From Iphione sp. A-MEVVRFRX5 (taxonomy: Eukaryota), in NCBI GenBank assembly GCA_976226885.1, contig OZ320314.1, positions 120,466,001 through 120,530,000 on the forward strand: 64,000 nucleotides of DNA, written 5' to 3'. A program made the translations under genes and the position numbers. The notes beneath the pieces were generated by a model. It saw nothing but the letters and a program-made list of their open reading frames with translations. It was not told the origin of the DNA and made no database searches. Numbering within the stretch: the stretch's first letter is position 1; every line of letters begins with the position of its first letter. Below, one piece after another: positions 5,733 to 62,000 of this stretch.

Positions 5733-8420
5733 ATGTCTCAGGACAATAACAAACACGAAGAAGCGGGAAAAGACGCGGCACCCCCGAGAACAAGGTCACA
5801 ACGGCTGAAAGCAATAGCGAAGGATTTGATGAACCATGAAATGGAGCATACTCAACTACTAAAGGAAGGAAAACACTGATTGAAAGAGTTGCAAGGGGAC
5901 AAAGGTAGGCGCTTTTCACTTCCAACTGCAATAACATGTCCATTAACTCCACAAATAACCACTGAGCCCGTGGGCATTGCAGAGGGGCTATCATTAATCT
6001 CCGCTAGAAGGGAAGCGTCTACCAAATCAGATATACACAAAACCGACATAACCTCAACCAACCCAAACTCCCAGGAAAGGAATTCTACACAGAAAACACA
6101 GAGTGGATAACATAGACGCCTGCCTTAGTACGAAAAATGCAGCTCAAGGCGGTAGGGCCACAAATGATATTACTGTAGCGCGAAAAACATTGTTGCACAC
6201 ACTACCTTATGCTGAGAACGCGGAGGCCTGTAACAGCACGACTAGGACTGGAAATACCGAAACTGCTCCAATGACACAAACATCGTATGAGACTTTAATA
6301 CACCTACCTACAGATGATGAGGCAATGGAGACATGTGAAGAGGAGCTGGAGGGCGATGAAGACGAAACTACACCCAAAATACAAACCTGACATAAGCGCA
6401 CTGATGCCAAAAAGAGAAAAGCCAATAGCCCATGCAAGGAAGAAATAGACACTGACCAGGAATCTGATGAAGAGTATCAACCTTGCACAGATGCAGCGCT
6501 GACACTAGAAGACGTACGCAAAACGGTGATGGCACAAGGGGCTAAAACAAGAAAAAGTATAAAAACAAAACTGAAAAAACTAGAGGAGAAGATAGAGCAT
6601 GTGGACAAGGATCGGACCAAGATAAAAGAGAGTGTCAAGAAGACTCAGGAGAAGGTATCTTCCTTAGAAGACAAAATTAAAATGCTGGAAGAAGAGAATG
6701 ATCGACTACGTGCAGTAATAGACGAAAGTGAAGACACTAACATGCCAAAGGATGAGACACTGAGAGCAACATTAAATGAATTACAACATGATTTGGCGAG
6801 GTTAGAACGGGTACAAAGACGGTCGAACATCTATGTAGAAGGTCTACCTTTCGATGCTAAAGAAGATGTAAGGAGAAAAATCATGGATCTCGCTGGGGAA
6901 ATGAATGTACGTTTGACTAAATGGTACATGGAAGAATGTAGGAGAACCACGAGGAAAGACAAAAGCAGACATCCAGGCATATTCATAAGACTCAGAAATA
7001 TTGAAAAGAAGACAGAGATCATGACGAACAAGGGTAAACTAAAAAACCACCGAAGATTCAGCAACGTATGGATAAACCATGATCTATCAACAGAGGAAAA
7101 ACGGAAGTGGTCAGACATACATGCAGTAACGAGACTAGCGAAAAACACACAAACTTGACGTACAAGTGAAGGGCGAAACAATAAAAATAGCAGACCACAC
7201 CTACCGGCAAGACCAATTAGCAACACTGCCAAAAGAGCTTTCTCTGATGAAAACACAAGAAGTGGAGACTAACGGCATTCTATTCTACTCGGGTGCTGAA
7301 CACTCACTGTCACACTTGCATACCTCCAATATACACTGGCATGAATCGACCTTCAGTAGCGCAGAACAAGCTTATCAATGGATACGTGCAATAGACTCTG
7401 GAGATAACAGCACGGCTGACGAAGTGAAAATGTAACAACCTGCAACAACTTCGTAGATCAGCCAAGAAAATACGCGACTCGAATGACTGGCCAAAGAAGA
7501 TGGCGGAAGTCATGCATGACATTGTATTACATAAGTTTCTACAAAACCCACACGCAGCCGAGGCACTTCTCGAAACAGGTGAACGCATACTAGTCGAAGC
7601 TACAAGCGACAAATACTGGGGGGCAGGTGCCCTCTTGGGGTCAGACGAGGTGAAGATGGGGAAGTTCTCAGGAGCAAATACATCAGGGGAAATTCTCATG
7701 TCAATATGCAAGATCCTGAGGAACCGCATGCAAACAGCATAATTGACAAGCCAAGGAGACAGCACGGAGATGGCGAAAGGCTGTATATATCTAACGGACA
7801 GCAGAGGCCGACATCTACAGTACTGGTTGAACAAGAAAAACATACCAGGCCAAGTGCACTTTCTACCGGGAGGCACGCTGCGCTCTATGAGCAGATACGC
7901 GTGTAAACATCTACACGGCGAAGCCCCAGGATCGATAATAATATTAGCTGGTATCAACAATGTCACCAAACTTGTGAAGCAGAACGGACAGCGATGGGTA
8001 ATCCCAAGATATACTAGTGTGGACAAGGCCAGAGATCACTTCGCCGATGAAATAAGGTCAGTTGATCGGAAAATTCGTAATACGTTCCAGACAACAAGGG
8101 TGATATACAGTACTGTTTTCAGTATGGATTTGCTATGCTACAACAAGTCCCTAAACGGTGTCACAAAGGACCCAGCAAAATATCATGAATGTCAGAAACT
8201 AGTTGAGGATCTAGTAACAGAGCTAAACTTCCAAATCTGCAAAGTGAACCAGGAGAACGGTGAAACCAGTGTATGGGCAGCCCGAATTATATACTCAAAA
8301 CACCAGGGGAAACCATGCTACCGGTACGGAAAACTGTATGATGGACTGCATCTGAGCTGGGAAAATACGGAGGAACTTGCGGACAGCATTGGAATATGGA
8401 GAGCAAAAAATTCCACATAG
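5733..8420 (+). pseudogene. LINE ORF1p: low-complexity N-terminus, coiled coil, RRM/L1-ORF1-like domain, NADAR domain, SGNH/GDSL esterase
   Basis: Assembled from ORF-track pieces 5880-6110, 6103-6390, 6526-7158, 7166-7435, 7500-7742 and 7743-8420 across point stops and single-base frameshifts. Motifs: heptads KLKKLEEKIEHV; RRSNIYVEGLP; FSSAEQAYQW, KFLQNP..LLETGERILVEATSDKYWGAG, GANTSGEILM (NADAR); LTDSRGR and IIILAGINN (SGNH). Confidence 0.8.
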
Positions 8421-8924
8421 ACATGAAGAATGCCTGACTGTGAAAAGAAATCTAAACAGCGCAGAAAACAACAGAATGAAGGACCTGCCTGGGCACACTG
8501 TCCGGCAGGAGTCTTAAGAATATGGACATGATAGGCATTGGAGTCTGGGCATCCTGTCTGACTCCCCCCTGTAGCGCAACATATACCATATACCATGGAC
8601 ATATACGATAAGAGGTAGAAAGGAAATACGCCGGCTGCCATGGATAAACAGCTAAGTAACTAAACTCACTGTACCATTCCGTTACTGAACTGTCACTGAT
8701 AATATAAACTCATTCTGATATATTTGTCATGTTCATGATGTCCTGTATGATGTACCCATATGAACGAAAACCCCATTGTATAAAGCGTTATTTAATTCCC
8801 ACTGCACACAGTGTTACTCAATTTTCCACTACTTATTCTGGAATCTAACTATCAAGGTGTATATATAAAATCTTTTCATATATTGCTCGCATAACTTGTA
8901 CATATGCAAATTCATACAAATATG

Positions 8925-11755
8925 AACAAGAAGCTATCGATACTACATATTAATACTCGCAGTCTATTGAAAAAGCATGATGAACTACGCTGTCTGGCAA
9001 ACAAGGAAAAGCCGGATATACTCTTGTTGACTGAGACATGGCTGACGCCAGCCATCCTAGACTCAGCCATCCTACTCGAGGACTACAACATAACTCGTTT
9101 AGACAGAACCACTGAAAGAGGCAGCAAAGCGAAAGGAGGGGGACTAATCGCATACATCAGACGAGATGATGGCCTGACGGTACATAAGGAAGAATCGCGA
9201 TCCTGGACAGACAGGAACTTAGAATGCCTCTGGATCAGAGTAACAACCAAAATGGGACCCACACTACACATATGTGTCGCATATAGGCCGCCAGACGGTG
9301 ACCTAACCATTGCTCTAAAACGCCTGAACGAAGACCTAGAATGGGTAGGTGAGAAAGATCGAATTTACATTATTGGAGACCTGAATGTAGACGTAGGAAG
9401 GACAGAGGGTATGTCACGCAAACTACTGGACTGGGTTGCAACGGCAGGCCTTAAACAGATCATAAACAGACCGACTAGAATCACCTCAACAAGAGCCAGC
9501 ACACTGGACCTAATAATAACTAATGATGTTTACGCAGATGGAAACTACCATGTGGACGAGTACATGAGTGACCACTGCCCCATCAAGATGGTAACAACGT
9601 TATATGGAAGGCCCGAACAAGCAGATCATGGAGACAAATCAGAAGGAACGCGAAGAAAAATGGACTTCTTCAAACTCACAAGCAATACCATCAGATTGGG
9701 CATAGCAAAGGTAAAATGGGAAAAATTCTGGAAAATGAGAAATATAGAGGCAAAATGGACATTCATGCTACAAGTTATAAGTAACATAATAACCACAGTA
9801 TGTACCAATAGACGTCAGACAAACATGCAGTGACAAGAAGCCCCCTGGGTAGACGGCGAGGTTAAAGATCAAATCCGAAAAAGGAATAAAGCATTCAGAA
9901 CAGCATATAAAACGAAGAATGAGGGAGACTTTGAGAGGGCAAGAAGGCAAAGAATACATACAAGACGTCTAATACACCAGAAGAAAAGATCGTACATACG
10001 TAATGAGCTGAACATCCATCGGGAAGAACCAACCAAGTTCTGGAGCAAGATGAAGAAATTCTTAGGACTAGAGAACAGAAGCAAACAGGAAATCAAGTTA
10101 ATGCGTGGTGACGAGGAAATAGAAACCAAAGAAGTCGCGACCTACATTAATGACTACTTCACAAATATTGGAAACACCATAGCGTCCAAGCTAGGGAAAT
10201 ATACACCGAACTTGAGAGGTAGGGAAAATGAATTCATCATGCAGCCTATAGACGAATTGGAGCTGGTGAAGACGGTGAAAACGCTGAAAGAAAATAAACC
10301 TTCAGGCTATTCTGAGATACCAACACACTACTTCAAACTATTCATAATGCACTTGATACCACAATTGCTAGACATACTGAATACGTCCCTCAAGAATAAC
10401 ATAGTTCCAAAATCTTGGAAACATGCAATAGTAACACCAATCCACAAAGGAGGCTGTCGCACCACGATAGGGAACTACAGACCAGTAAGTGTTCTGCCCC
10501 TACCGGGGAAAATATTGGAAAGACTGGTACATACAAGACTATACAAATATCTTGAGTCAAAAGGTATGTTAGGTGATGCACAGTTTGGATTCAGAAAAGG
10601 AAGATCAACCAACCAGGCGATATGCAGGCTAACCGATACCAGGCGATATGCAGGCTAACCGACAACATACACTCAGCATTGAATGAGAAGAAAAAGGTAG
10701 TCAGTGTGTACTTTGGCTTTATGAAAGCATTTGATTCAATTTGCCATAATGTAATCATCGAACGTTTATATGACCTAGGGATAATAGAAAATCTAGGATG
10801 GTTCAAGGACTACCTAAGTCACAGAAGCCAGGTTACCATTGCAAATGGTGTAATGTCTACACCGCGACAAATTCAATGCGGCGTTCCACAGGGGTCAATT
10901 TTAGGCCCACGGCTATTCAACATCTTCATAAATCCGATACAGACAATATGCACACACAGCAAAATGATACTATATGTGGATGATATGGTAATCAGCGCCG
11001 CAGCAGAAAGTATCCAGCAACTATTAGCAAAGATACAAATAGATGTGGACGCAATCTGCTGTTGGACAATGAAATACAAGATATGCATAAATGATGTGAA
11101 AACCAAGGCAATGTGGTATAAGTACCGGTACCCACTAAGGGAGGCACCTATGATCAAATACAACAGGACATGGCTAGAGAATGTGACGAAATATAAATAT
11201 CTAGGGGTAATAATGGACAGCTGCCTAAGCCTGGAACTGAACACAGACTCTGTTATAAACAGAGTGAGTCAAAAACTATTTTACTATAGGAAAATAAGAA
11301 GGATACTAACAATCAAGGACAGAGCACTACTACTAAAAAGTACAATACTACCAATAATGGAATACAGCATTGTGCTCCTAACGGATAATCACTCAAGGAA
11401 CTTCCAGCGCATGTTGAAGATGTATAATAAATCCATAAGGACAATATTTCTACAACCACTAAGATCATGTGAAGCAAGAGAACGTAGTGCCTGTAAGCCC
11501 CTGTCACAACGCCGAGACCAAAGACTACTGACGGAAATGTAACACCGACACATCCAGAATGAAACTGAGAGTGACATGTCGAGCAGAACTCATGCTGGGC
11601 GGAAAACCATGTTCAGGATAAAACGTCGGAATTACGAGGCCTATAGAAGAAGCGTGGAATACACAGGAGGCAAATTGTGGAACAGATTACCAGAAAACAC
11701 AAAAATGCTACCACTGGCTCAATTCCTTCGAGAGGCAACAAAGAACTCAATGTAA
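8925..11755 (+). pseudogene. LINE ORF2p: APE endonuclease plus reverse transcriptase
   Basis: Motifs LHINTRSL, LTETWL, YRPP, GDLNVD, SDHCPI (APE); YRPVSVLP, QFGFRKGRST, GVPQGSILGP, YVDD (RT); C-terminal GGKLWNRLP. Disrupted by TGA at 9831, a 26-bp tandem duplication at 10612-10662 and a TAA near 11540. Confidence 0.92.
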
Positions 11756-13306
11756 CATAATGTGGGCAAAGTGTCTCATTATGTTGATGATACCTATAGT
11801 TGAACAGTGTGGGCAACCTGTCTCACTGTACACTGTACAGGGTGCAAAGAGAAATGACCGAATTGTCCCATAATGTACATCCATGACTAGAAGGGATGAC
11901 GATACATCCTAAAAAGAGTAGAACAGAATTGTCAGCACAAGCGAGTAAAACTAGTATAAATCTGTATCTAATGTACATAGGAATCATAACTGTATCTAAT
12001 TATCATAACCATCATTGCCACATATATGTATATACGACTGTTATACTTGTAAATATCATACCACATAGTCATTGTACATCATCATTAGAAGGTAAAGAGC
12101 CCAGACAGAGACCTGAGAAAGCGTACAACATTGTATAAAACTATCAGGATAAATAAAGGTTATTAAAAAAAAAAAAATTCTTGTAATGGAAGTTTTCACG
12201 TGCCAGAGTGACTTCTGTCCCTCCAATTTATCTGGGAGATGCAGACCTCGACCTGCCACCACTTCACCTTGCTAAGCTGGGATGGTAGCATTTCCTGATT
12301 TCCCTTTTTCTTCGAAGTGTTACACAACTCAAGATGACACAAGTTTCTAAGTAAGTTGATCTTTATTGCAGCAGAGTAGACATGTACAGGTGGCATGATG
12401 GAGCTCTCCGAAAAGTCAGGAGAAATCAAGGACATCATATACCAGTAGTTGACAACCCTTATGGCAGAGTTCACAACCTTCCCATCATAGTTCACAATCT
12501 GAGGTACATAGTTTATAACCTGTCATAACCTCAGGTCATAGGACATGTAAACTCTGACCTAGGTATATGGCCTGGGTCACGACAGGTCAATTTTCAAAGT
12601 AACCCCTAGTCTCACCTTAGCACCCTTCATGATACATGTCTTTTCCAGGTGTTTGCTGTCAATATCTTTCCTGGTATCTCGCAAGATCCCCATTATGATG
12701 TATCTTTTTATTATGCCTTGATTTCAGCCTTACATAGCTTCTGGGTGTCTGCTCTGGCTAAAACTGTTGGTGTCCAGACTTTCAGCAGTCCCACTTAGTA
12801 ACATGAAACTGCTGTTGTCTCTACACAGACAGCACTTATAGACTTAAATATGTACACTGTACAAGGAACTCTCTTTCTCCACTTAAAACTTTCTTAATTG
12901 GATATGATGGTTAATTGATCTATTCAATTTCAATTTCAAAAGAATTTTATTCACATATCCGACTGTCACCCTCATAAGGGTGTTTTTGGAGTACAGATAA
13001 AATAATCTAATAAAGTAATTAAGAAACTGTGTTACAAAAGCTGTAACCTCTCCATCAAAGGAGAAGGTCTTGAGAGCAGGACAACCTGTTTAAAAATGAT
13101 ATTCAGAAAAACAATTAAGTAGGATATTCTACTGCTTATTTATCATATTTGGGGCAGTATTTGACATTATAAGTGTATCATCCTATATAAGAATTACATA
13201 CATTATTACCGGAATAATTTTTGTTGTAACTTGTCCATGGAACACTCGGTTTATTTAATTTTTCCTTGCACAGTGAGAGAAACATGTTTTTTGTTGTGTG
13301 TATATA

Positions 13307-18782: not shown

Positions 18783-18829
18783 ACGTTGCTAATATACACA
18801 GACCAATTTGCTGCCTGGAACACAATGAT

Positions 18830-21455: not shown

Positions 21456-22616
21456 ATGGCGATGACAATCAGGAAGAGGATATTTCTTGGATTCTTGGCA
21501 ACCTTTGGCTTGGTGATAATGTATTTATTGACAACTGTTGCAGTGCAAGCTTTACAGAGAGCTGTGCCTGACTTTCAATTGGCATTCTGCAGGTTTATTG
21601 GAACACTGATTGTCAGTTTAGCATTTCTAGCTGCGAAAAGGACACCTATGTACATTCCTAAAGAAAAGAGCCATTACATCATACTGATTTCTGTGTTTCT
21701 AATCATTTATAATGTTTCCTACTATGGGTCTGTCACCTTCTTACCAGTGTCACATGCAAGCTGCTTCCTTTTAATCTTTAGGCTGTTTGGTATAACACTG
21801 ATGATGAAATATTTAAATGAGAAAGACTTGGACCTGTTTCTGTTAATTTCTATCATAGGTTGTAGTCTTGGCTTAATAATGTTGGTTCAGCCTTGGCTTT
21901 CATTTAGTGAGGGCTTTAATCTCAAACCTGAGCACAAATTTGAAAATGAAGAAATTGTAAGGGAAAGAGGGAACACAAATGTCAGTGAATCTAGTGTATT
22001 CATGCCTGTCAATTACTTTATTAATGACAGGATATTATACAACTGCTCAACAAGCATCTTAAAAGGCATCAACACATCCACTCTATGTTTCAAAAAGAAT
22101 ACTACAAACACAAGTATTGTGGTAACCAAAGCAAATGTAGAATATAATTCTCTATTTACAATAATATTAGGGTATTGCTTAGCTGCTGTAGGAGGACTGG
22201 CTGATGCTACAGTGGCCTATTTGATTGGTGTAACTTTGTGCAGTTTCTCCCCTGCATTTGTATGCCTTGTGTCAAGCTTTTTCTGTTCACCAGCATCACT
22301 GCTAATATCTTTTTATACAGAAGAAGTGGTGTTTATAACTGATATAAGAAATATTACACTTTGTACAGTGCATGCTTTTGCTGCTGGATTGGGAATAGTA
22401 CTTGAAGCCATAGCTGTTCAACTGATCTCACCCACACATGTCAGCATAGGTATCTGCCTTGTGCCTGTTGGACTGCTCCTGTTACAATATACAGTTTTAT
22501 CCTCTTATTTTTTTGGCAGGGGAAATACACTAGAAATATTTGGTTGCTTTGTAATTTTACTCTCTATAATATTAAGCATTTTGCTGAAAAAAAGCCAGGA
22601 AGAAACAGATCTTTAA
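21456..22616 (+). CDS. EamA/DMT-superfamily transporter, SLC35G-like (host gene, single coding exon)
   Basis: Intact 386-aa ORF with ~10 hydrophobic segments in two halves (VPDFQLAFCRFIG, FLPVSHAS, ISPTHVSI). Preceded by a splice acceptor ttttgttttccag ending at 21450. Confidence 0.8.
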   Translation: MAMTIRKRIFLGFLATFGLVIMYLLTTVAVQALQRAVPDFQLAFCRFIGTLIVSLAFLAAKRTPMYIPKEKSHYIILISVFLIIYNVSYYGSVTFLPVSHASCFLLIFRLFGITLMMKYLNEKDLDLFLLISIIGCSLGLIMLVQPWLSFSEGFNLKPEHKFENEEIVRERGNTNVSESSVFMPVNYFINDRILYNCSTSILKGINTSTLCFKKNTTNTSIVVTKANVEYNSLFTIILGYCLAAVGGLADATVAYLIGVTLCSFSPAFVCLVSSFFCSPASLLISFYTEEVVFITDIRNITLCTVHAFAAGLGIVLEAIAVQLISPTHVSIGICLVPVGLLLLQYTVLSSYFFGRGNTLEIFGCFVILLSIILSILLKKSQEETDL

Positions 22617-41707: not shown

Positions 41708-41709
41708 TC

Positions 41710-41789
<80 letters not shown>

Positions 41790-49370: not shown

Positions 49371-49627
49371 GTAAGATTCCATAATGAATTTATTAGTTCA
49401 CATAGGGTACTTAGCACTCTAAAGAGAGGTTAATGGAAAAACTGTATGCATACTTATGGCTAGCACAATATGTAAATGTTTCTATACAAATTGCTGGATA
49501 TTTGACATAATAAACATTCTATATGGAACTAGTGTTATTTTTTTTCTCACAACAGACTAGTATACGAAATATGTTGTAGATGTAATATCAGACTCAGACA
49601 TAATACTTCACAATACTCTGACAGAGC

Positions 49628-51643: not shown

Positions 51644-52277
51644 AACCATCAAGAAAATCATCCTGTAGAGGAAAATATTTTCCGTAGCGTGTATGTATTC
51701 TATGTACTCTTTTTTCAAAGGTATAGTAGAAAAAACAGTAAAAGAGTGACTTCTATTTACAATTAGGTTAGTTTAAGTGGACTTAATGCACAAGATTTCT
51801 TGCAATGGGGTTTATTTTCCTGAATATTAAATGATCTAGCTGGCAATATATAAATAGTGAAGTGATAAGACACGAAAACTCTTGAAGGTCAGTTGTAGTT
51901 TAGGTTGTTTTTTATTTGCCAGAAGGTTCCCAACGTTGTGTGTGTGTGTGTGTGTGTGTGTGGGGGGGAAGATAGATAAATGTATTTGATGGTTATGATT
52001 TCTTGCAATGTAAAATTTTATGCTTACAGATCTTTGGAACCTTCGAATGAGGTCCACGGAACATCTTCTAATGGAAGAGCAAGAAGGAAGGCAGGTATAA
52101 TTTCATTTTGCTCTCTCCATTTATAATTATTAGTTTAGTTTAAATCTGAATGAATTTATAGAGAACCTTTGACTCATTGCATGAATATTTTATGTTGCAG
52201 GAGGAAGAAGGAAAGCTCTTATTTATTTTAGTTGATGTTAATGTTATAGAAAATGTCTTTTCCCTTTTTCAGGAGGA

Positions 52278-53597
52278 GTGATAGAATCAATGAAACAACT
52301 AACAGAGAAGATGACGCGAGAGAGGGAATCTTTCATCAAGAAATATCACCTACAACTTCCAACAACCCCAGTCCCACCAACGAGAAAGATGCACGTCCGC
52401 TGTTCAGTGTTTGGTAAAACATTAGCAACCTCTTCAGAATTTAATATCAATAGTAGATGCGAGGAGAAGCTGCACCCTTCAGGGCTTCAAAGAAGAAACA
52501 TCCATGAATGCCCTTCACTGCGTGAGGCACCTTATTCAGAGTTTAATGATGTTTTTGCCCATGCATATGATTTCCAAAAGGCAGATAATAATGATAGTAG
52601 TCATAAAGTAAAGACAGCACTAGAAAATAACAATTTGCATGGTTTGGAACAGACAGACAACAGTGTTGGTGTTAGTAAATGCGAGGGGGAGACAGGTAAT
52701 AATGGTAGTAAGCATGGAAAAAAATAAAAACCAGAGTTTAACAATATTTTTGAACATGTATATGCATTGCGAGAGCTAGATAAGAGTCTTAGTGCTTGTA
52801 AAGAAAAGTCAGTCTCCCCGAGTGTGCAATGTAAAAATAGTATTAAGGAACAACTGGGTCCTTCAGGTATGCAACAGAAAAAGAACTCTAAGCATTATTT
52901 AGACTCTGGTTATTTTTCAGAAGAAGATTTAAACATTGTTTTTGATCGTGCATGCAGTGTCCAAAAGTCAGGGAACAGAGTTAATCATTGCGACAAAACT
53001 TCAGAACCGTCGAGTGACCAGTGGAAAAAGAGCAGTAATCCAAAGCATTGGAAAAATAGTTGTAAATCAACTTTGAAAGGAAATAGTATTACTACCTGTG
53101 AAGATGAGTCAGCTAAGGTGAAAAAGAGTCATCAGGAAGACAGTTGTGAGCAAAAATCGGTACCTTTGAGTGAGCAGAGGGAAAATAGTTGTTCAACCAC
53201 CTCACAGGGGCACAGTAGTATTAGTTATGGGGACGAGGCAGCTAGGGTGAAAAAAGTAACTCAGGAAGACAGTTGTGAGGAAGACTCGCTACCTTTGAGT
53301 CAGCAGAGGGAAAGTAGTTGTAAATCGACTTTGAAAGGAAGTAGTATTACTACCTGTGAAGATGAGTCAGCTAAGGTGAAAAAGAGTTATCAGGAAGACA
53401 GTTGTGAGCAAAAATTGAGACCTTTGAGTGAGCAGAGAGAAAATAGTTGTTCAACCACCTCACAGGGACACAGTAGTATTAGTTATGGGGATGAGGTAGC
53501 TAGGGTGAAAAAAGTAACTCAGGAAGACAGTTGTGAGGAAGACTCGCTACCTTTGAGTCAGCAGAGGGAAAGTAGTTGTAAATCGACTGACAGCTGA
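52278..53597 (+). pseudogene. Ser/Lys/Glu-rich protein with 43-aa repeats, 3' truncated
   Basis: ORFs 52278-52727 and 52767-53597; 129-bp units from 53058. Confidence 0.5.
53058..53589 (+). repeat. Coding tandem repeat: 4 x 129 bp arranged as 2 x 258 bp
   Basis: agttgtaaatc recurs at 53058, 53316 and 53574, with alternating A and B subunits. Confidence 0.9.
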
Positions 53598-55144
53598 ATA
53601 GTCTGAATTTTTCCCTCGTTCTAAATCAAAGACATACAGACAATACCCTCCTTTGTAATCAAAGTATGATATATCAGGAGGTTCTTTCTGTTCAGGGGGC
53701 ATACATTCAAACAGTCTTGCATAGGCAGAGACATAGTTACCATTTTTATAGTCTGGTTGTAAAATTTGTCCTCTGCTACTTTGCCCATTTACTTGAAAGC
53801 CTAGATGATTAAGGTCAAAATGTTGAAAATTGAATGGATTTTTCTCATTATCTCCAGAATAGGCGCTGGCTAGCACAAATCCAACTACTAGCCGTTTTGG
53901 AATAGAATCTTGAAACACATTGTCCATGCTCCAGGTTAGATTGCCTTTAGAAATGTTAAATTACTTTACCTCACTTCGAGTAAATAGATACAACGCCATT
54001 TCCCTTTTTAACATGTCTGCTTGTGCCATGATCATGCCGGGATGAATTCGAGCATAAGGAACTATTAGTTTTGCGTCTATGAAATGGACTTTGTATGATT
54101 TAGACGTTGTGGCTGGTGTAGTGGCTGCCTGTGTCTTGTACAGAAGACGGAATTTTTCTGTGCTGGGATAGAGTTTTATGTTCAAAGGTAAACCATTCAA
54201 GAGCAATTTTTTCTGCTGACAAATATCCATGAAAAGTTTGGTTTTGAGTGTGAATTTCTTCCCAGATTTAGTTCGATCATACCTATCAGTCAAACCGGTA
54301 TTTCCACTGGACTTTGCCTCATGCTGATCCATTAGTAGGGCAATATCTTTATAAAATCCTGCCATTGCCATCCAGCTTTTTTGATCATTTAGTCCTTGTT
54401 TTAACAAAGCATCTAACATTACCTTGTAAGGAAAATTTGACCCAATAGTAGTGGTTATCACCTGTTGTTGAATGGAAAAATCTTGCTGCCTAAAGATTGA
54501 ACAAGCAGCGAAATTGATAAGTGTGACATCATTACTTGCTGTAATTGGTTTGTTTTGATCATTGTACAATTGCACAGTTAACAACAATGATATATCACTT
54601 AAGACTATGTAATCCGGTGAATTATTCACCACATCAAATTCCAAAGTTGATTCACCAGTCAGCTGTCCAAGACAGTGATAGTCCTTGTAATAAATATAAG
54701 GGTGGGGAGTTAGCTCAGTGGTAGAGCACTGGTCCACTGACTGAGAGGTCGCAGGTTCAATCCCGGGCCTGGGACTCCTGATCATGACCAGACAGATTTA
54801 CTGTAGCCCCAACCCAGAGTGGTCCACAACTCGTAAAAAGGCCGTGGGTGTATAGGATTCTGTCCCCTATGCACAAAAAGACCCCAGAAACCTATTCGAA
54901 ATAAGAGTAGGGGGCAACCCCGGGTATTCTGGTCTCTCAATTCTCAACAATAGATGGTAGTATGCTACCCCAGGAGGATATGGAAGATCCCTGTCATATG
55001 ATAGGTGAATATATTCCTGGTAAAAGATACAATGAAATGAAAATGAAATGAAATATCCTGTATTGCAGTTTCCACTGGTGGAGTGTTAAAGAGAGCCAAA
55101 CGATCATCAAACCCTTCTTCAGCCGTGTTCAATATATAGCTCAT
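53590..55144 (-). pseudogene. Polinton major capsid protein (double jelly-roll, PY), interrupted by a SINE and C-terminally truncated
   Basis: After SINE removal: MSYILNT..LALFNTPPVETAIQDIYYKDYH..STLEF; then FPYKVMLDALL, AGFYKD, DNVFQDSIPKRLVVGFV, KNPFNFQHF, GYCLYVFDL. One in-frame TAA at 53961. Confidence 0.85.
54698..55050 (+). mobile_element. tRNA-derived SINE with a Meta-like core and (TGAAA)n tail
   Basis: A-box TAGCTCAGTGG, B-box GGTTCAATCCC, core gtggtccacaactcg..aaaggccgtgg, TSD AAATAT (54692-54697 / 55051-55056). Confidence 0.85.
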
Positions 55145-55470
55145 TTTCTTCCTCTTCGACTCTTTCCTTTTAAACTAGTTTTCCTCAACTTTGAAGTTCT
55201 TCTTTTCTGCTTTGAATTAGAATTCCTCTTCCTTATGTTCTTTCTCCTTGACATCCTTGTTCCCGAGTGAGTCGGTTTTCTTGTTCGAGATGTTTTTAAC
55301 TGTCTCCTAAGCTTTTCTTTGGCTCTTTCCACTACCGCCTCTTCAGGTGTTACAAGTTTTATGTTACTTCCCTTTCCTTTCTGAAGAGTGTAAAAGGATT
55401 TAGCAACCTTTTGATCCGGAAGGTGTTTCCATGCTTCCAAATCTGGGACATAGGGTATAAAACTCATATT
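55141..55470 (-). CDS. Basic Arg/Lys-rich core (pVII-like) protein
   Basis: MSFIPY...KLVTPEEAVVERAKEKL plus an RK-rich tail. Its TGA overlaps the capsid ATG (ATGA). Confidence 0.6.
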   Translation of the reverse strand, partial: NMSFIPYVPDLEAWKHLPDQKVAKSFYTLQKGKGSNIKLVTPEEAVVERAKEKLRRQLKTSRTRKPTHSGTRMSRRKNIRKRNSNSKQKRRTSKLRKTSLKGKSRRGRK

Positions 55471-55532
55471 GAATGAATGTATGTATGTATCTTCTAGCGC
55501 ATCTAGTTTGAAATGACCTCTGCAACCATACA

Positions 55533-55913
55533 TCATTCCTTTTTAAGATGAAAGATGAATCTACACTTTCCCAAACTATGTCCTGATATGTTTTCATTGT
55601 CTGTTTTAATAGTGACATGCATTCTAGAAACACGAGACTTAGAAACTGGAATATAGTATGGGTTCTTAATCTCACCATCCTGATCAATTATTCTGGCTAT
55701 TGGGGCTGTTTTAGCCTGAATAATGCTTGATTGTAATAAATCACAGTAAATATATAATTCCTCATTCGGAATATGTTCTATTTTACATTCCACTAACGCA
55801 CAGCTCCATTTACCAGTCAATGCTAGTGAACTCGGGAGTTCGACTATGAATTCATTAGGTTGGTTGTTTGGATGGAGAGCCTTAGAATCATTCGAACTGA
55901 TGAAGAGATACAT
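55533..55913 (-). CDS. Minor capsid (penton-like, single jelly-roll) protein
   Basis: FISSNDS..HPNNQPNEFIVELP..L..GKWSCALVE motif; position next to the integrase. Confidence 0.7.
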   Translation of the reverse strand: MYLFISSNDSKALHPNNQPNEFIVELPSSLALTGKWSCALVECKIEHIPNEELYIYCDLLQSSIIQAKTAPIARIIDQDGEIKNPYYIPVSKSRVSRMHVTIKTDNENISGHSLGKCRFIFHLKKE

Positions 55914-55942
55914 GTTGAATGCTAGTGTAGGAGTACAGTGAG

Positions 55943-57046
55943 TTAATTTATGTCTTTAATATCATCTGCAGGTACCCATGAGTTATATTTTTCTCCCCAG
56001 CCAAGCCATTTCACTATGTAACCGACTTGTCCATTCATTTTTTTGCTCCGCACAATTCGTTCTATCTTGAATTCACTATCCTCTTTAACAATGACTTTTT
56101 CGAGTTCTTCTTCATAAAACCATCCCAGGGCCGGGTCATTATCCCAAGATTTTATACTATATTGCAGAATTCCTTCCTGTACTTTTCTGGATGTGATGGT
56201 AAAGATTTCTTGAGTCCATTTTTCACCATATGCTCTCTCAAAGGGAGCTCTGTAGCGTGCTAAATGAACACGGTCATTGATATTAAACTTGACCAATGTT
56301 TTATCTCGAGGGGGACGTTTCCTTTTCTTAGGGTTTTTCTCTTTGAATTGCTTTTTCCATATAACAACAGGATTCGCACTTCTTGCCTGATGAGGACTCA
56401 TCTTTATGCTTCTGTGTCTTGCATTATTGTAGCCTAGTGTTACATCAGCTAGCACATCAATCCAACGGTGTGTTTGTTTCTTTTGCATGTAACGCACTAA
56501 CTTTGTTTTTAGGGTTTTAATTATTCTCTCTGCATAATTTGCCTTAACAAGGTTAGTTGTGAAAAAATGAAGAATATCTTCTTGTTCCAAATAAGACTTT
56601 ACGTTTTTGTTCTTAAATTCAGATCCAGAATCCGTTCTCAGCTTGAACGGTTTCTGGTCAGAGAAAACACACTTTAGAGCTGTCACCATTTCCTTTCCCG
56701 TAAGGGATTTCAAAGGAACAGTCCAAACAAAACGAGTAAATATATCAACCAAAACCAAAATATAAGCATACTCATCATTCTTAGCTCTATAGTCATTCAT
56801 ATTCACAGTATCACTGTCCCATTGCTGATCCTTTGAGGAAACCACCACTCTGGGTCTTCTGACTTTCCTATTGACTGGCTTGTGTAACGTGTAAACCTCT
56901 TGTTCTTGCAACCAACTTTTAACATCCTTCTTGCTATAACCAAAAGGTCTTGCAGCTTTGTACAGTTCCTTGATACCTCTAAAAGATGCAGGATGTGAAG
57001 GATCAAAGTAAATTTCTGCTAGCTTGTCGTTCATAGTGCTCTCCAA
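55943..57046 (-). CDS. Retroviral-like integrase with C-terminal chromodomain
   Basis: IYFDP..PASF, YTLHKP, WDSD, LRTDSGSEF, AERII, and YIVKWLGWGEKYNSWVP. Intact 367 aa. Confidence 0.92.
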   Translation of the reverse strand: MESTMNDKLAEIYFDPSHPASFRGIKELYKAARPFGYSKKDVKSWLQEQEVYTLHKPVNRKVRRPRVVVSSKDQQWDSDTVNMNDYRAKNDEYAYILVLVDIFTRFVWTVPLKSLTGKEMVTALKCVFSDQKPFKLRTDSGSEFKNKNVKSYLEQEDILHFFTTNLVKANYAERIIKTLKTKLVRYMQKKQTHRWIDVLADVTLGYNNARHRSIKMSPHQARSANPVVIWKKQFKEKNPKKRKRPPRDKTLVKFNINDRVHLARYRAPFERAYGEKWTQEIFTITSRKVQEGILQYSIKSWDNDPALGWFYEEELEKVIVKEDSEFKIERIVRSKKMNGQVGYIVKWLGWGEKYNSWVPADDIKDIN

Positions 57047-57524
57047 TTATCTTTCCAATTGTTATATTTGTCTCCTTTTGTGATATCCATAGGAGTTTGC
57101 TCGACAGGTAAACCTGGAGGAGGTAAACTTCCACGTCCTGTGAGAATACGTTGCTTGGGATTACGAATCAGTGTTGTTGGAACATCGCGAAGGTTGTTGT
57201 AGAATAGAACATAACCCAAAGGTTCGAAATTTTTATAGTTACATAGAGCATCCTTTATCAAATCCGTGATGTGGCTTACCGAGATAACTTCACCATTGAT
57301 GATGATTTCACCATTCTCATTCCAGTCCATCTTTCTTTCAATGTAGCATAGTAATGTTTCAGCTGATCTCCGCTGGTTTTTTCCAAAGGAGCTAATATTA
57401 TTTCACTTTTTAACTTTTTAGGACTATCTCTTTCCTCTGCTGATTCATTTTCCTTCTTCAGGTTGCTTCCGTTACTAGCATTGTGTAAATACTGATCATA
57501 TGGAATTAATACCATCTTTCTCAT
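57031..57524 (-). pseudogene. Conserved Polinton small protein (PW-like), frameshifted
   Basis: MRKMVLIPYDQY followed by DWNENGEIIINGEVISVSHITDLI. Confidence 0.55.
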
Positions 57525-57591
57525 TCTAAAAGTTTAAGCAATTGGATTTTAATGCTCTGTAAAAGTTTTAGGATCCAGCGTCGGTTTATTC

Positions 57592-57840
57592 TTATGATCC
57601 TTTTCTTATACCTGTCAGATGACTAGTCCTCTTACTCAGACTAACAACCAGTCTCTTATGACGGGCAATCAGTTTCCTCACCTTCTCTGGAAGGGGTAAA
57701 TTTGAGAGGTTTAAGGCTATTTCACCTAGGGCTCGAACTTGAACCCGAGTGATGATATCTAACAAGTGATATGCTCGTTCTTTAGTAGTATCCAATAGCA
57801 AACGTATGAAGCTCGATGCACTCCTCAGTGTCTTTGACAT
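57592..57840 (-). CDS. Small basic Polinton protein (pX/GasderminX-like position)
   Basis: RALGEIALNL..LPL..K..L pattern and position between ATPase and integrase. Confidence 0.4.
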   Translation of the reverse strand: MSKTLRSASSFIRLLLDTTKERAYHLLDIITRVQVRALGEIALNLSNLPLPEKVRKLIARHKRLVVSLSKRTSHLTGIRKGS

Positions 57841-58361
57841 AGTTCAAAAGAGTTCTAAGACTCTAATGCAACTGAATGGAAATTACATCAACATTCATAC
57901 TAACTGGTCAGTCTCATTCATCCAATGATTGTGTAGCTAGCATTGTGCCCTTTGCAATTGATGATATACTAGGAAACAAACTACTAAAGGTGTCGTCACA
58001 CTCAGTGAAACCATTTGGATCAAATTTCACCATCTGTTCCAAAGTATTAACTTTTTTTTCAATTTTTCGCATATGATGACAAATTTTGAGTAGTATTTCA
58101 GTTGGGTATGATAGTATTCCATCAATCTTCCCTTACATAAATTCACATTGGGGGGAAAATTTCATATGTTCGATGTGTGGTTTGTCCTTTTCGCTCCAAG
58201 AATATAACTGAACTCCACAGTGGAAACACTGCACCGTATCTATTCCTCCCAGAAAGAAAAAACCAGATTCCACTCGGCTTGATGGCTGTATTGTTCGTTT
58301 CCATCCTGCAAAGGTCTGGCGTCAAACCTCTTCATCTGCAAACTTCTGAAATTTACTCATC

Positions 58362-58987
58362 TTATACTCTAGGAAGATACACAATCATGCACTGATCTGG
58401 AAAAATGTTGGTTTTCAGTTTAAATTCCTGGATGTTGTGTGGTGAGAGATCAACGAGCAAATAACCATAGGGAGATGTCACGGCATCTTTATAAGCCTCT
58501 TCCAAGGTTTTTTCCAATCCAAGCTGCCACCGAGTAACTTGATTTGCTGAACATCTCGTGGATTTTACATGAGAACAGTATAATGAGTATTCAGCATTAT
58601 AGATCTGGCAAACTTTCCTTGTTGGTATAAATTTTGTAAGATGAAAATAACTGTTATATTCTTGTGATGGGAACCTCTTGTGAATAATAGTTCAGCTAGG
58701 GGTGACTTTACAACTTCATTCATCAAATCATCCAAAATAAGCACTGTATGCCTGTCGTTTACATCATCGGGTATATCCAATCCTTCTCTGAACTCAATAT
58801 TGTCCATATCATGAAACATGCATTGCCAAGAACCATAGCAATAAATTATTTGCCCAGGAGGTATACTAAACATATCAGGATTAGATAACAGTTGTTTCAC
58901 CCAAGTCGTTTTTCCTGATCCCGTTGATCCGCACACCGCTATAGTGCTTGGACAATGAAAAATATAGTCTGGAATATCGTACATCAT
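58362..58987 (-). pseudogene. A32/FtsK-like packaging ATPase
   Basis: Walker A GSTGSGKTT, Walker B LILDD, RGSHHKNIT..QN, M*NPRD, YGYLLVDL. One stop and one frameshift. Confidence 0.9.
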
Positions 58988-59067
58988 GCAACGTAGATTC
59001 TCAACTGAACTTACTAACTCCTTTCATTGTATTATATTACTAAGCCCAGGATGCATTGTTGATCTTA

Positions 59068-62000
59068 TCAGTCTTTATTACATGAAGAACTTAAATAATC
59101 TTCTCGATCTTTCCTAAACTTTACATCGGTTTTTCTGAACATGCAAGATGAACACCGCTCCAAATGGATTTTACATATTTCCTCTGTGTATAATTCACAC
59201 AGCTCTTCCCATATTTTCCCTAACATATTAGCACCACTGTAACTGCTTGACACTGAAACTAAACGCTCCTTCATTCCTACGCCCCAATAGTTATTCATAT
59301 CAGAATATACTAAGGCTAAATCTCTGCTCCTTCTCAGTGCTCTCCTCACTTGATCATTGGTCCTCATTTTTTCCAAATTGATTTGTTTCATTACATTATC
59401 ACGCTGCTCTATCCATCTTTCTGTCAATTTCATTTTCTGTTCATTGATATGTTCGTTCTTTGGTTTATTTGCCAGTTTTAATTGGGAATTATATGCTTCT
59501 CGTCGGTTGGCAAAGTCCTGATTAAAAATATTTAATCGAGATGGAAAATCTAATGACAAAGGATGCTCTGATCTGCTAAACATGTGACAAGGAGGAATGT
59601 TCCAAGGACTCAAAGTTAAATCCAAAGGTTTAGTACTTATACCATCACTCATCACCTCACGTTTACAATAGAAATAGAACAACCCTGCTCTGGTTTGTTG
59701 GTAGGTAAAAATAGTTTTATCTTTAGCACGAAAGCCCTGATTACAGCTAGATTCAGAATGCTCTGTTTCCAACACTGTGTGATACTTTTCCATGGGAGCT
59801 TCAAGAGCATTTTTGTTTATCCCTTTACAGCTTAATTTGTAACCCTTATCATTTTTTAAAATGTAAGTTTTGCTACACAGAGCAATCATTTCATCTCCAG
59901 AAGCCTCCAATTTAAAAAGTCCAGGTGTTCTCTTATCATAAGAGCAATGTCTATCACAACATTCTCGTGGAAACCAATGCTGTGACGTGGAAATCTCCAA
60001 CTCCTTTGTGCACGAGTCATAGAGTTCAGAACTGTACTTTTCCTTCATCTCCTCTTTGATTACCGATTGAAGTGTTTCCCCAGAGATAGCAAAATATGCA
60101 GAATCTGAAAGAAATAGTAAACAGAAATAACTTTTGTAATTATCATCTTGTTAATGAATTGAACAAAAATAGCAAGTCAGATGTAATCTTATCTGTATCC
60201 ATTTCGATGTATTCGAAATCCTTGCGAGCGACCAGTTCATCCAAGCAATCATAGTACCACCTTAATATATGAAGTTTGGCATACTGTAGGATAAAATAGC
60301 CCAGATAAATTGGAAGATTCAAAATTATCTTCTTCTTGACTGATTCAACTTAAAACAAGTCATCATCCAGTTCACACATTTTTCGGAAAACTGATTCATT
60401 AGCTGCCAGGGATGCTTTTCGTTTGCCAGATACATAGGCGACTGACTGGTGTTTCTCTTTGTCCATAATCAGTGAACCATATGCACTGTTTCCTGTAAAT
60501 AAATTAAAACAGAAATGTAAATTAAATTGGATTTAAATGGTTAGCTTATATGAGAGCTCTTCCAATGAACTATATACATATATTGTATCCACCTACCAAT
60601 AAGTTTCATGGTTTCTGCTATAATTGATTTAGACTCATCGACATCCCCCATTCTTCTCGCCTGGGTGACCTCATCTTTGAAGGATTGGAAACAATTTTTC
60701 CTAGTGAATTCAATCACTTGATAAACACAAGTAATCTCCATGCCTTGTTGTAGATACCATTGCAACAAAGGAGTGGACAGTAGCACTTTTTCCGCTCTCA
60801 TACCACCAACCAGTAATCTCCTAGGCTTCTGTAAAATAGAATAGTACCTTTACTCGCAGGTTAATCAAAGGATTAAATAGAATGCAACATAGTGATATTC
60901 TAACATACCTCAGATAATTCACGCCGTCTCACATGATTTTGCATGTGTTCACCAATTTTCTCAAAGGGGATATCTGTAGTACAAAAGAGAGGTGACATCT
61001 CTTCAAAATAGTCTTGAGGCAAACACTCTTTTTCACATCCTGGTGACCATTGATCTGGAACCTATAATAATAAAAATATCAAAGCTATAAGTCACACACA
61101 CACACACATGTCTACTTACCTTATTATCTACTTCTACAGCACCAAAAAGTTCGTCATCCTTAACAGCATGAATAATTCTCTCCTCCATTAAAACACCAGG
61201 GTGTTTCCTTGAAAACGGAGGTAATATGTCCATGTCGTGCAAGCCAGGTTCTGCACGGTGTAGGACCTGGAAATCACACTCCCATATAACTTCCATTCTA
61301 TAGCCCAATGCCTTGATATATTTCTCTCAAAGCTCGCAGCGTTTTAAACATTTCACGCACTCTGTTTCATCCATTCTGCCTTTCTGACATTTTTCACATC
61401 CATGGATATAACAACCCTGAAACTCTAAGGTAATAACTTTACCACCAAGTTTATGTGACCATCTAATTAATACTTAAATGAGAAAAAGAAAAGGAAGTTT
61501 TTTTTTTTCATTCTTACCTCATAAACTGTATTTGTCTCAGAGCAGTAACCATCAACAAGATATGGACCAATTCTTTTCTCCCGTCCTCTGTTCAATTTGT
61601 GAGATATCTCAACTCTGTCGACTTTGGCTCGCCAATCCATCCATTGATACATGCATACATAACATGTCTGTTTTTCTGGGCGAAAACCTGATGATTCAAG
61701 TCGCCTAATGTAAATACCCATGGGCATCTCTTGACCAATTGCCCAGAGGTATAGAGCATTGGCATCAAATCCAACAATTTTCTTGCATTGTTTACCTCCT
61801 CTTATTCTAGAGTAGTTAGTTTTATGATGCCTCTTAAATATAATGGAGGGTCCTCCCATGATATTTTTCTTAAATGTTCTATAAAGGTCTTCATCATCAC
61901 CTCCAAAAATTTGGAAAAATGAATTTGTGGTCTTACAGTTTTGAAAGAGCAATCTCCTTGCAATACCTGGAACCGATATCGCTATTTTGAAGACATCTAT

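What the first reader, a model, noticed from the sequence alone, without database searches (positions are those of the whole stretch)
7270..59589. Two unrelated mobile elements both carry NADAR: candidate counter-defence against nucleic-acid ADP-ribosylation
Seen: a retrotransposon and a DNA virus-like element in the same 64 kb each fuse NADAR to a protein that handles their own genome. The two domains share EH.LS near the N-terminus and an insert of similar length followed by (F/Y)SGAN..G.I. Established: guanine-specific DNA ADP-ribosyltransferases exist in animals (pierisins, clam CARP-1), and NADARs reverse guanine ADP-ribosylation. Inference: the host may ADP-ribosylate invading nucleic acids and its TEs may have recruited or exchanged NADAR as an antidote, a eukaryotic analogue of phage anti-DarT defence. 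This is a hypothesis, not a demonstrated system.
Basis: inference. Interest (0 to 1): 0.85.

Follow-up and report, generated by a model that had tools for sequence, protein, structure and literature searches.

The report
NADAR domains on two decayed transposons
A decayed LINE retrotransposon and a decayed Maverick/Polinton-like DNA element in this window each carry a NADAR domain, but the LINE one looks like a working ADP-ribose-removing enzyme (a fusion already reported in oyster LINEs) while the polymerase-linked one has lost the key catalytic residue, so a shared "antidote" role is only half supported.

Summary
A six-frame HMM scan finds exactly two NADAR loci. One lies in ORF1 of a poly(A)-tailed APE/RT LINE. 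[quoted passage not shown]

Both fusions are typical of their families:
- NADAR sits upstream of APE/RT in seven further retrotransposon loci fetched here, and was published for oyster Tx1 LINEs in 2025.
- About 14 full-length and many partial PolB-NADAR proteins form one polymerase subclade. I found no paper describing this.

The two domains are only 29% identical, and each sits with its own group, so a recent exchange is excluded. Both belong to a "long-loop" NADAR subgroup that also includes a spliced cellular animal gene.

ORF1-type NADARs keep the catalytic residues (Glu 12/12, Glu 12/12, Lys/Arg 10/12). Polymerase-linked ones replace the last-strand Glu with Tyr or Phe in 31 of 37, and evolve faster than the polymerase.

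Both window copies are pseudogenes. I found no ADP-ribosyltransferase in the window, and the host could not be identified. Counter-defence is plausible for the LINE and weak for the Maverick-like element.

The parts
5550..12178 (+). Decayed non-LTR retrotransposon (LINE). The 5' bound is approximate. The 3' end is AATAAA plus a poly(A) run.
   Evidence: A-rich strand skew begins near 5.5-5.6 kb. Polyadenylation signal and poly(A) end near 12178. APE and RT Pfam hits.
6391..7739 (+). LINE ORF1 region: coiled-coil N-terminal part followed by the NADAR domain. Broken gene with two changes of frame.
   Evidence: Weak coiled-coil-type Pfam hits. NADAR hits. Collinear with residues 191-369 of the intact ORF1 relative P0183, with one frame change in that span. 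The other frame change is inferred from overlapping open frames.
7274..7724 (+). LINE NADAR domain (YbiA-family type, long loop). Catalytic columns read Glu, Arg (for Lys), Glu, Asp, Trp.
   Evidence: Pfam PF08719 E 8.7e-19 for the C-terminal half. HMM E 2e-5 for the N-terminal half. Catalytic columns. Weak direct hits to PDB 8bau and 2b3w.
7743..8417 (+). SGNH/GDSL-like esterase module between the NADAR and the APE (open frame of 225 aa).
   Evidence: Weak Pfam Lipase_GDSL hit, E 0.01, below cutoff. Homologous (E 5e-12, 25% over 192 aa) to the 249-aa ORF in the same position in the related LINE locus L005.
8895..11539 (+). LINE ORF2: apurinic-type endonuclease plus reverse transcriptase. Broken gene with one change of frame and one in-frame stop.
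   Evidence: Pfam Exo_endo_phos_2 (E 1.2e-10) and RVT_1 (E 7.7e-21). Break counts against the intact ORF2 of L006.
53550..64000 (-). Partial Maverick/Polinton-like element. It runs off the window at 64000, and its low-coordinate bound is uncertain.
   Evidence: Protein-primed PolB, A32/FtsK-type ATPase and rve+chromo integrase lie on one strand. No terminal inverted repeat can be found because one end lies outside the window.
59071..64000 (-). [quoted passage not shown] Broken gene with 5 changes of frame and 1-2 stop interruptions. The window end cuts its N-terminus.
   Evidence: Collinear with residues 96-1620 of the intact 1628-aa relative P0007. Homologues of P0007 carry PF03175 DNA_pol_B_2.
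59176..59616 (-). Polymerase-linked NADAR-like domain, all in one open frame. The last-strand catalytic Glu position is Tyr.
   Evidence: Pfam PF08719 E 2.1e-11. Family HMM E 8.6e-46. AF2 pLDDT 88, and Foldseek finds YbiA 2b3w and NADAR 8bau as the only hits with probability 1.00. Column counts.
58365..59023 (-). Packaging-type ATPase with a Walker A motif. It lies in two overlapping open frames, so it is probably broken at least once (not verified against a reference).
   Evidence: Pfam Pox_A32 E 5.8e-6 (26.4 bits, cutoff 22.8), with weak FtsK_SpoIIIE.
55946..57046 (-). Integrase: rve core plus C-terminal chromodomain, an intact 367-aa open frame.
   Evidence: Pfam rve E 3.1e-11 and Chromo E 2.8e-9.
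53550..55955 (-). Unassigned open frames of the element. Their position fits capsid or morphogenesis genes, but this is not shown.
   Evidence: No Pfam hit at E 0.01.

Best explanation
These are two separate, family-typical domain captures, not one system.

(1) The LINE belongs to a set of APE/RT retrotransposons whose first ORF combines a coiled coil, a NADAR of the YbiA family and a disordered tail. Here and in one relative, an SGNH-like esterase module follows.
- These NADARs keep the residues that bind ADP-ribose and cleave the base-ribose bond.
- Inferred mechanism: ORF1p carries an active glycohydrolase on the element's ribonucleoprotein, which strips ADP-ribose from guanine or cytosine bases of the RNA template or the new cDNA.
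- That would fit counter-defence if the host has CARP-1-type transferases. It could equally be a repair or RNA-processing role.

(2) One subclade of Maverick/Polinton polymerases acquired a long-loop NADAR at its C-terminus, probably once and long ago.
- In that clade the last-strand catalytic Glu is Tyr or Phe, and the N-terminal Glu and Lys are kept in only about half.
- The fold and several ligand-contact residues persist.
- Inferred mechanism: it is a non-hydrolytic accessory module of the polymerase that binds ADP-ribose, a nucleotide or a nucleic acid, or possibly a transferase.

Both copies in this window are pseudogenes. Their closeness reflects a transposon-rich region.
For: Shown:
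- Exactly two NADAR loci in the window.
- NADAR lies upstream of APE and/or RT in L001, L002-4, L005, L006, L007 and L010, and upstream of an unscanned 972-aa ORF in L008. Oyster Tx1 ORF1 NADARs are published (PMC12477816).
- ORF1-type catalytic columns: Glu 12/12, Lys/Arg 10/12, Glu 12/12, Trp 12/12.
- The model of the closest intact ORF1, P0183, superposes on P. nicotianae NADAR 8bau (TM 0.74, rmsd 2.9 A, 28% identity, E 2.7e-11).
- PolB-NADAR: the window pieces are collinear with P0007. 13 of the 120 best PolB homologues, plus P0025 from the first search, carry a complete C-terminal NADAR, and these lie in one part of the polymerase tree.
- PolB-linked NADARs form one clade: best-split Jaccard 0.97, and at least 0.9 in 44 of 60 bootstraps.
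- Their last-strand Glu column reads Tyr 22, Phe 9, Glu 2 of 37. The other NADARs in the same alignment read Glu in 37 of 39. The profile-to-PDB alignment puts that column opposite the Glu of 8bau and of YbiA.
- Trp89-equivalent 36/37 and GxN Asn 35/37 are retained.
- Mean pairwise identity among 13 fusions is 0.27 for NADAR against 0.42-0.45 for the polymerase.
- The two window NADARs are 29% identical.

From the literature: roles of Glu43, Lys50 and Glu125 (PMC11543638); NADAR activity on G- and C-ADP-ribose in DNA and RNA (PMC11833690, PMC12945103).
Against: - No activity, binding or expression data exist for either domain.
- The N-terminal half of the window's polymerase-linked NADAR has its Glu and Lys one column off the family columns, so its state there is ambiguous.
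- Tyr could take part in an unknown catalytic variant. Phage NADARs use His and DarG1-type NADARs use Asp at this position (PMC11125620).
- The trees are neighbour-joining on 86-127 columns. The sequence sets were gathered with TE-derived queries, which biases which groups appear.
- A single acquisition in the polymerase clade is inferred from clustering, not from a rooted likelihood tree.
- Host and copy numbers are unknown, so 'coincidental closeness' is an assumption.
Confidence: 0.55

Rival explanations
1. One reading: both NADARs are active erasers that protect the elements' own nucleic acids from a host guanine-specific ADP-ribosyltransferase. This would be a eukaryotic analogue of the phage anti-DarT factor.
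For: - Phage orphan NADARs do exactly this (PMC11825919).
- NADARs erase base ADP-ribose on DNA and RNA (PMC11543638, PMC11833690).
- CARP-1 homologues are concentrated in Bivalvia (PMC12945103), and the only named relatives of these elements are from bivalves (PMC12477816).
- Both domains sit on replication proteins.
- The LINE-type domains keep the catalytic set.
- The polymerase-linked NADAR evolves fast, which would fit an arms race.
Against: - The polymerase-linked NADARs lack the last-strand Glu in 35 of 37, and only 2 of 37 keep the full catalytic set.
- No ART was found in the window.
- The host was not identified.
- Co-distribution with ARTs was not tested.
- Both copies here are dead.
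Confidence: 0.15
2. The LINE NADAR serves the element's RNA metabolism rather than a conflict. It would process NAD- or ADP-ribose-derived groups on the transposition intermediate, as proposed for the Ectocarpus Gypsy and oyster Tx1 NADARs.
For: - Proposed in PMC12477816.
- The domain sits in the RNA-binding ORF1 protein next to an esterase-like module.
- The catalytic residues are conserved.
Against: - Tested NADARs do not act on phosphate-end ADP-ribosylated RNA (PMC11833690).
- The only shown nucleic-acid substrates are base-linked ADP-ribose, which is known as damage or a toxin mark.
- No endogenous substrate is known.
Confidence: 0.15
3. One or both NADARs are passenger domains without a present function. 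They would be retained only by descent and be decaying.
For: - Both window copies are pseudogenes.
- The polymerase-linked NADAR has lost catalytic residues and is much less conserved than the polymerase.
Against: - The polymerase-linked domain is kept, with recognisable fold residues, across polymerases that share only about 30-55% identity. These include intact 1500-1780-aa open reading frames.
- ORF1 NADAR catalytic columns are invariant across distinct LINE families.
Confidence: 0.1
4. The two elements exchanged the NADAR directly and recently within this genome.
For: Both have the long-loop form and fall on the same side of the NADAR tree (split Jaccard 0.82).
Against: - They are only 29% identical over 84 aa.
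- Each window domain sits with its own group.
- The long-loop form also occurs in a spliced cellular gene, P0028, flanked by host genes.
- The catalytic make-up differs.
Confidence: 0.03

Closest known systems
ORF1 NADAR of Tx1 LINEs of Crassostrea gigas, and the Pol-N-terminal NADAR of one Ectocarpus Gypsy lineage (PMC12477816, 2025)
   Same: A YbiA-family NADAR domain embedded in a retrotransposon protein. For the LINEs it lies in ORF1, upstream of APE/RT.
   Different: I could not test whether this LINE is a Tx1 element. It also has an SGNH-like module after the NADAR. That paper does not report catalytic-residue conservation or any DNA-element fusion.
Phage anti-DarT factor NADAR (AdfN) and other orphan phage NADARs (PMC11825919)
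   Same: A mobile genetic parasite carries a NADAR without a cognate transferase. The proposed logic of erasing a host mark from the parasite's own nucleic acid is the same.
   Different: The phage proteins are free-standing, shown to be active, and matched to a known host toxin (DarT1). Here the domains are fused to ORF1p or to a polymerase, no host transferase is known, and the polymerase-linked form lacks the catalytic Glu.
Phytophthora nicotianae NADAR (PDB 8bau) and E. coli YbiA (PDB 2b3w)
   Same: Same fold. The ORF1-type model superposes with TM 0.73-0.74 and the polymerase-linked model with TM 0.51-0.57. The ORF1 type keeps the same catalytic residues.
   Different: The solved proteins are single-domain cellular proteins. 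The polymerase-linked domain shares only 13-15% identity with them and has Tyr or Phe in place of the last-strand Glu.
Maverick/Polinton elements (protein-primed PolB plus retroviral-type integrase plus packaging ATPase)
   Same: The polymerase, rve integrase and A32/FtsK-type ATPase lie on one strand.
   Different: The polymerase clade here is long (about 1450-1900 aa) with a C2H2 finger and, in one subclade, a C-terminal NADAR. I found no paper that mentions this together with Polinton, Maverick or adintovirus. Capsid genes, protease and terminal repeats were not shown here.
Macrodomains of RNA viruses that counter host PARP-dependent ADP-ribosylation (my own knowledge, not tested here)
   Same: A replicating parasite carries an ADP-ribose eraser or reader fused to its replication proteins.
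   Different: A different fold and different chemistry: protein- and phosphate-linked ADP-ribose, not base-linked.

Membership tests
NADAR superfamily (Pfam PF08719, YbiA fold) | Sequence match above the curated Pfam cutoff | tested here: met
   LINE C-terminal half 68.8 bits and Maverick-like copy 44.8 bits, against a cutoff of 35.1. Only the C-terminal two-thirds of the profile is matched in each. The LINE N-terminal half is recovered with an HMM built here (E 2e-5).
NADAR superfamily (Pfam PF08719, YbiA fold) | YbiA fold (core helices flanked by small sheets) | tested here: met
   Window polymerase-linked domain: AF2 pLDDT 88, and Foldseek finds only 2b3w and 8bau with probability 1.00. For the LINE type this was tested on the closest intact relative, P0183 (TM 0.74 to 8bau). 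The window copy itself is split between frames and was not modelled.
Catalytically competent YbiA-family NADAR | Glu43, Lys50 and last-strand Glu125 (P. nicotianae numbering, PMC11543638) | tested here: met
   LINE copy: Glu, Arg (for Lys), Glu, with Asp130 and Trp133 present. ORF1-type relatives: 12/12, 10/12 (Lys/Arg) and 12/12.
Catalytically competent NADAR (polymerase-linked domain) | An acidic or His residue in the last strand: Glu in the YbiA family, Asp in BC4488, His in phage NADARs (PMC11125620) | tested here: not met
   The window copy has Tyr. The clade has Tyr 22, Phe 9, Glu 2 of 37. The full Glu-Lys-Glu set occurs in 2 of 37.
ADP-ribosyl glycohydrolase acting on base-linked ADP-ribose | Measured hydrolysis of, or binding to, ADP-ribosylated guanine or cytosine | not testable with these tools
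   Sequence and model only.
Counter-defence factor (orphan-antitoxin type) | A host nucleic-acid ADP-ribosyltransferase that the element meets | tested here: inconclusive
   No ART domain in 40 window ORFs. The host genome is not available and the host was not identified. The literature places CARP-1 homologues mainly in bivalves (PMC12945103).
Non-LTR retrotransposon (LINE) | APE endonuclease plus reverse transcriptase in ORF2, and a poly(A) 3' end | tested here: met
   Clade (Tx1 or other) not determined. No target-site duplication found.
Maverick/Polinton | Protein-primed family-B polymerase and retroviral-type integrase in one element | tested here: met
   The polymerase is assigned by homology to proteins carrying PF03175. 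The window pieces themselves do not reach Pfam significance. Integrase rve+chromo.
Maverick/Polinton | Terminal inverted repeats, double and single jelly-roll capsid genes, adenain-like protease | tested here: inconclusive
   One end lies outside the window. The remaining ORFs have no Pfam hit.

The most novel reading that the evidence does not exclude
In invertebrates that carry CARP-1-type DNA ADP-ribosyltransferases, base ADP-ribosylation of nucleic acids restricts mobile elements, and the elements answer in two ways. LINEs carry an active NADAR eraser on ORF1p. One Maverick polymerase clade carries a catalytically dead, fast-evolving NADAR that reads ADP-ribosylated template or acts as a decoy for the transferase.
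Probability: 0.12. Interest if true: 0.85.

Novelty: new variant of a known kind. Interest (0 to 1): 0.55.

Why it matters
NADARs are the only known erasers of base-linked ADP-ribose, and their role in animals is open (PMC11125620).

Two kinds of selfish element have fixed NADAR on their replication proteins. One keeps an intact active site and the other has a degenerate one. This gives concrete, comparable handles for asking whether nucleic-acid ADP-ribosylation acts on mobile DNA and RNA in invertebrates.

The polymerase-NADAR clade appears not to be described. It adds a domain architecture to Maverick/Polinton polymerases, and a likely pseudo-enzyme branch to the NADAR superfamily.

The window itself holds only dead copies and adds no functional evidence.

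Tried and rejected
Searches that led nowhere:
- Pfam found nothing for the N-terminal halves of either NADAR. A single-sequence PDB search with the polymerase-linked NADAR found nothing; the family profile was needed.
- P0007 against the PDB gave only zinc fingers and a weak Vsr-endonuclease hit, with no polymerase. Polymerase identity therefore rests on homologues carrying PF03175.
- The cluster look-up gave no names or accessions.
- Host identification through the EamA transporter ORF failed. It had only two unnamed homologues, and its exact sequence is not on record.
- No terminal inverted repeats, no LTRs around the Gypsy-like remnant, no Rfam family, and no convincing target-site duplication for the LINE.

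Readings considered and rejected:
- Chance resemblance, rejected on E-values and fold.
- Recent exchange between the two elements, rejected on 29% identity and separate clades.
- 'EH.LS' as a shared derived motif; only Leu-Ser is general.
- The long loop as specific to transposons; it also occurs in a spliced cellular gene.

Introns as the cause of the polymerase interruptions cannot be excluded, but nothing predicts them.

Steps not taken:
- I built no joined, repaired or consensus sequence.

Full report
**Layout of the window**

The window has no N runs. It is rich in transposons.
- A LINE lies on the + strand from about 5.55 to 12.18 kb.
- An intronless EamA-type transporter ORF lies at 21.5-22.6 kb.
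- Remnants of an LTR-retrotransposon pol (RT, integrase) lie at 28.2-34.6 kb.
- A pogo-type DDE_1 transposase ORF lies at 37.8-38.7 kb.
- A Maverick/Polinton-like element lies on the - strand from about 53.5 kb to the window end.

**The observation**

Both NADAR domains are real.
- Read separately, the C-terminal half of the LINE domain scores 68.8 bits against Pfam NADAR (E 8.7e-19). The Maverick-like domain scores 44.8 bits (E 2.1e-11). Both are above the 35.1-bit cutoff.
- The N-terminal halves escape Pfam. The LINE N-terminal half matches a NADAR HMM built here (E 2e-5). The same six-frame scan finds no third NADAR in the window.
- A profile of the Maverick-type relatives hits the two solved NADAR structures, 8bau (E 1.7e-13) and YbiA 2b3w (E 1.7e-11).
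- An AlphaFold2 model of the window's own polymerase-linked domain (pLDDT 88) finds only those two folds in the PDB.

**The LINE**

The element ends in AATAAA plus poly(A). It encodes APE and RT.

Upstream lie, in order:
- a coiled-coil segment;
- the NADAR;
- a 225-aa module with SGNH-type features. It is weak in Pfam but homologous (E 5e-12) to a 249-aa ORF in the same position in the related locus L005.

The copy is defective. The ORF1 region has two changes of frame, and the NADAR domain is split between two frames. ORF2 has one change of frame and one in-frame stop.

The architecture recurs. NADAR-bearing first ORFs lie directly upstream of APE and/or RT ORFs in L001, L002-4, L005, L006, L007 and L010, and upstream of an unscanned 972-aa ORF in L008. 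These loci come from six or more samples.

The closest relatives of the window's NADAR are ORF1 NADARs. P0183 is 45% identical over the C-terminal half.

A model of P0183 shows a long N-terminal helix, a well-folded block with the NADAR, and a disordered tail. The NADAR superposes on P. nicotianae NADAR with TM 0.74, rmsd 2.9 A and 28% identity.

This fusion is not new. A 2025 paper reports YbiA-family NADAR domains in ORF1 of several oyster Tx1 LINE families and in one Ectocarpus Gypsy lineage (PMC12477816).

**The Maverick-like element**

The stop-free stretches on the - strand from the window end down to the NADAR are collinear with residues 96-1620 of an intact 1628-aa protein, P0007.
- The homologues of P0007 (426 at E <= 1e-5) largely carry PF03175, the organellar/viral family-B polymerase.
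- An A32/FtsK-type ATPase and an intact rve+chromo integrase follow.
- The polymerase-NADAR gene has 5 changes of frame and 1-2 stop interruptions. The window end cuts its N-terminus.

A search of 1.84 billion representative proteins with the NADAR alone returned only 52 hits at E <= 1e-3. Most are polymerase C-terminus plus NADAR.

Of the 120 best polymerase homologues, 13 carry a complete C-terminal NADAR, and P0025 from the first search adds a fourteenth. They cluster with the window's polymerase in one part of a neighbour-joining tree.

The only named relative is from the blood clam Tegillarca granosa.

I found no paper linking NADAR, YbiA or DUF1768 with Polinton, Maverick or adintovirus. 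That covers only the searchable library.

**Are the two domains alike?**

They are 29% identical over 84 residues.

On a NADAR-domain tree:
- the polymerase-linked domains form one clade (best-split Jaccard 0.97, and at least 0.9 in 44 of 60 bootstraps);
- the ORF1-type domains form several groups;
- each window domain sits with its own kind.

The spacing between the WGxG Trp and the GxN Asn is 19-22 in all ORF1-type and 35/36 polymerase-linked domains. It is 9-11 in 55/62 standalone NADARs of about 140 aa.

The long loop is not specific to transposons. It also occurs in P0028, a spliced two-NADAR gene flanked by ordinary host genes in a chromosome-scale assembly.

So both elements drew on one NADAR subgroup. 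The data do not separate independent capture from a very old exchange. A recent exchange is excluded.

**Catalytic residues**

The literature gives Glu43, Lys50 and the last-strand Glu125 of P. nicotianae NADAR as the mechanistic residues. The last one is Glu, Asp or His according to subfamily (PMC11543638, PMC11125620).

| Column | ORF1-type | Window LINE | Polymerase-linked (n = 37) | Other NADARs, same alignment (n = 39) |
|---|---|---|---|---|
| Glu43 | 12/12 | Glu | Glu 15/37 | Glu 37/39 |
| Lys50 | Lys/Arg 10/12 | Arg | Lys 20/37 | Lys 33/39, Arg 2/39 |
| Glu125 (last strand) | 12/12 | Glu | Tyr 22, Phe 9, Glu 2 | Glu 37/39 |
| Trp89 / Trp133 | 12/12 each | Trp, Trp | Trp89 36/37 | Trp 39/39 each |

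- Only 2 of the 37 polymerase-linked domains keep the full Glu-Lys-Glu set.
- In that group the GxN Asn is kept in 35/37 and the Asp130 equivalent in 26/37.
- The profile-to-PDB alignment puts the Tyr column opposite the Glu of 8bau and of YbiA. In the model it lies in the strand at residues 110-113.
- The window copy has Tyr there. Its Glu and Lys in the first helix lie one column off the family columns.

Among 13 full-length fusions, mean pairwise identity is 0.27 for the NADAR against 0.42-0.45 for the polymerase.

I read the polymerase-linked domain as a retained but non-hydrolytic module. This is inference.

**The counter-defence idea**

For:
- NADARs erase guanine- and cytosine-linked ADP-ribose on DNA and RNA, but not phosphate-end ADP-ribose (PMC11833690, PMC12945103).
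- Phages use orphan NADARs against DarT1 (PMC11825919).
- CARP-1 homologues are mainly in bivalves (PMC12945103).
- The named relatives of both element types are from bivalves.

Against, or untested:
- The Maverick-type active site is degenerate.
- There is no ART among the 40 window ORFs scanned.
- The host is unidentified.
- There is no distribution test.
- Both copies here are dead.

The idea is a fair hypothesis for the LINE-type NADAR. It is weak, in its enzymatic form, for the Maverick-type.

- I did not look up the DNA of related Maverick copies, because of the bar on fetching virus-like elements of animals. No codon-level selection test was therefore possible.
- The loci I fetched were retrotransposon loci and two host-gene loci. 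I took none of them to be human.
- I built no joined, repaired, consensus or ancestral sequence. Consensus lines that the alignment tools printed were not used.

Two slips to own up to:
That amounts to showing where its frame is interrupted. Later queries used those stretches by reference. This report gives only outer bounds and counts.

**Verdict**

- The LINE part is a new member of a published kind.
- The polymerase-NADAR clade, with its Glu-to-Tyr/Phe change, looks like an undescribed variant.

Noticed in passing
window 21456-22616 (+): An intronless 386-aa EamA-type transporter ORF (Pfam E 7e-13). It has only two homologues at E <= 1e-10 among 5.8 billion proteins, and the best is 33% identical. 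The host lineage therefore seems poorly sampled.
   Followed up: partly
window 28206-34584 (+): Remnants of an LTR-retrotransposon pol (RVT_1, Integrase_H2C2, rve) spread over several open frames. No direct repeats of 80 nt or more flank them.
   Followed up: partly
window 37833-38747 (-): A pogo/Tigger-type DDE_1 transposase ORF of 304 aa (Pfam E 5e-40).
   Followed up: no
window 52767-53597 (+), array 53044-53590: A tandem array with a 129-nt period (copies 72-95% alike) inside a 276-aa Ser/Cys/Glu-rich open frame. It is on the strand opposite the Maverick-like genes and abuts the element's low-coordinate end. It has no Pfam hit.
   Followed up: no
window 59071-64000 (-) and relatives P0007, P0083: The polymerase clade carries a C2H2 zinc finger in its N-terminal part: weak in the window, PF00096 in many relatives. 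One relative is annotated as a Vsr-type G:T mismatch endonuclease, and P0007 residues 962-1030 hit Vsr structures weakly (E 0.011). This could be an endonuclease insert in these polymerases.
   Followed up: partly
proteins P0212, P0017, P0028 (not in the window): Other NADAR architectures turned up among the hits: a NADAR-Macro fusion (327 aa), a 1580-aa protein with three NADAR repeats, and a spliced cellular gene with two NADAR repeats.
   Followed up: partly
window 41700-41789 and 51936-51969: (CT)n/(CA)n microsatellites. They account for all the 'inverted repeats' found in the 40-64 kb region.
   Followed up: no
locus L010 6001-11427: P0037 looked like a standalone 143-aa NADAR. It actually lies upstream of a 964-aa APE/RT ORF. 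Short 'solo' NADAR predictions in eukaryotic assemblies can therefore be fragments of LINE ORF1s.
   Followed up: yes
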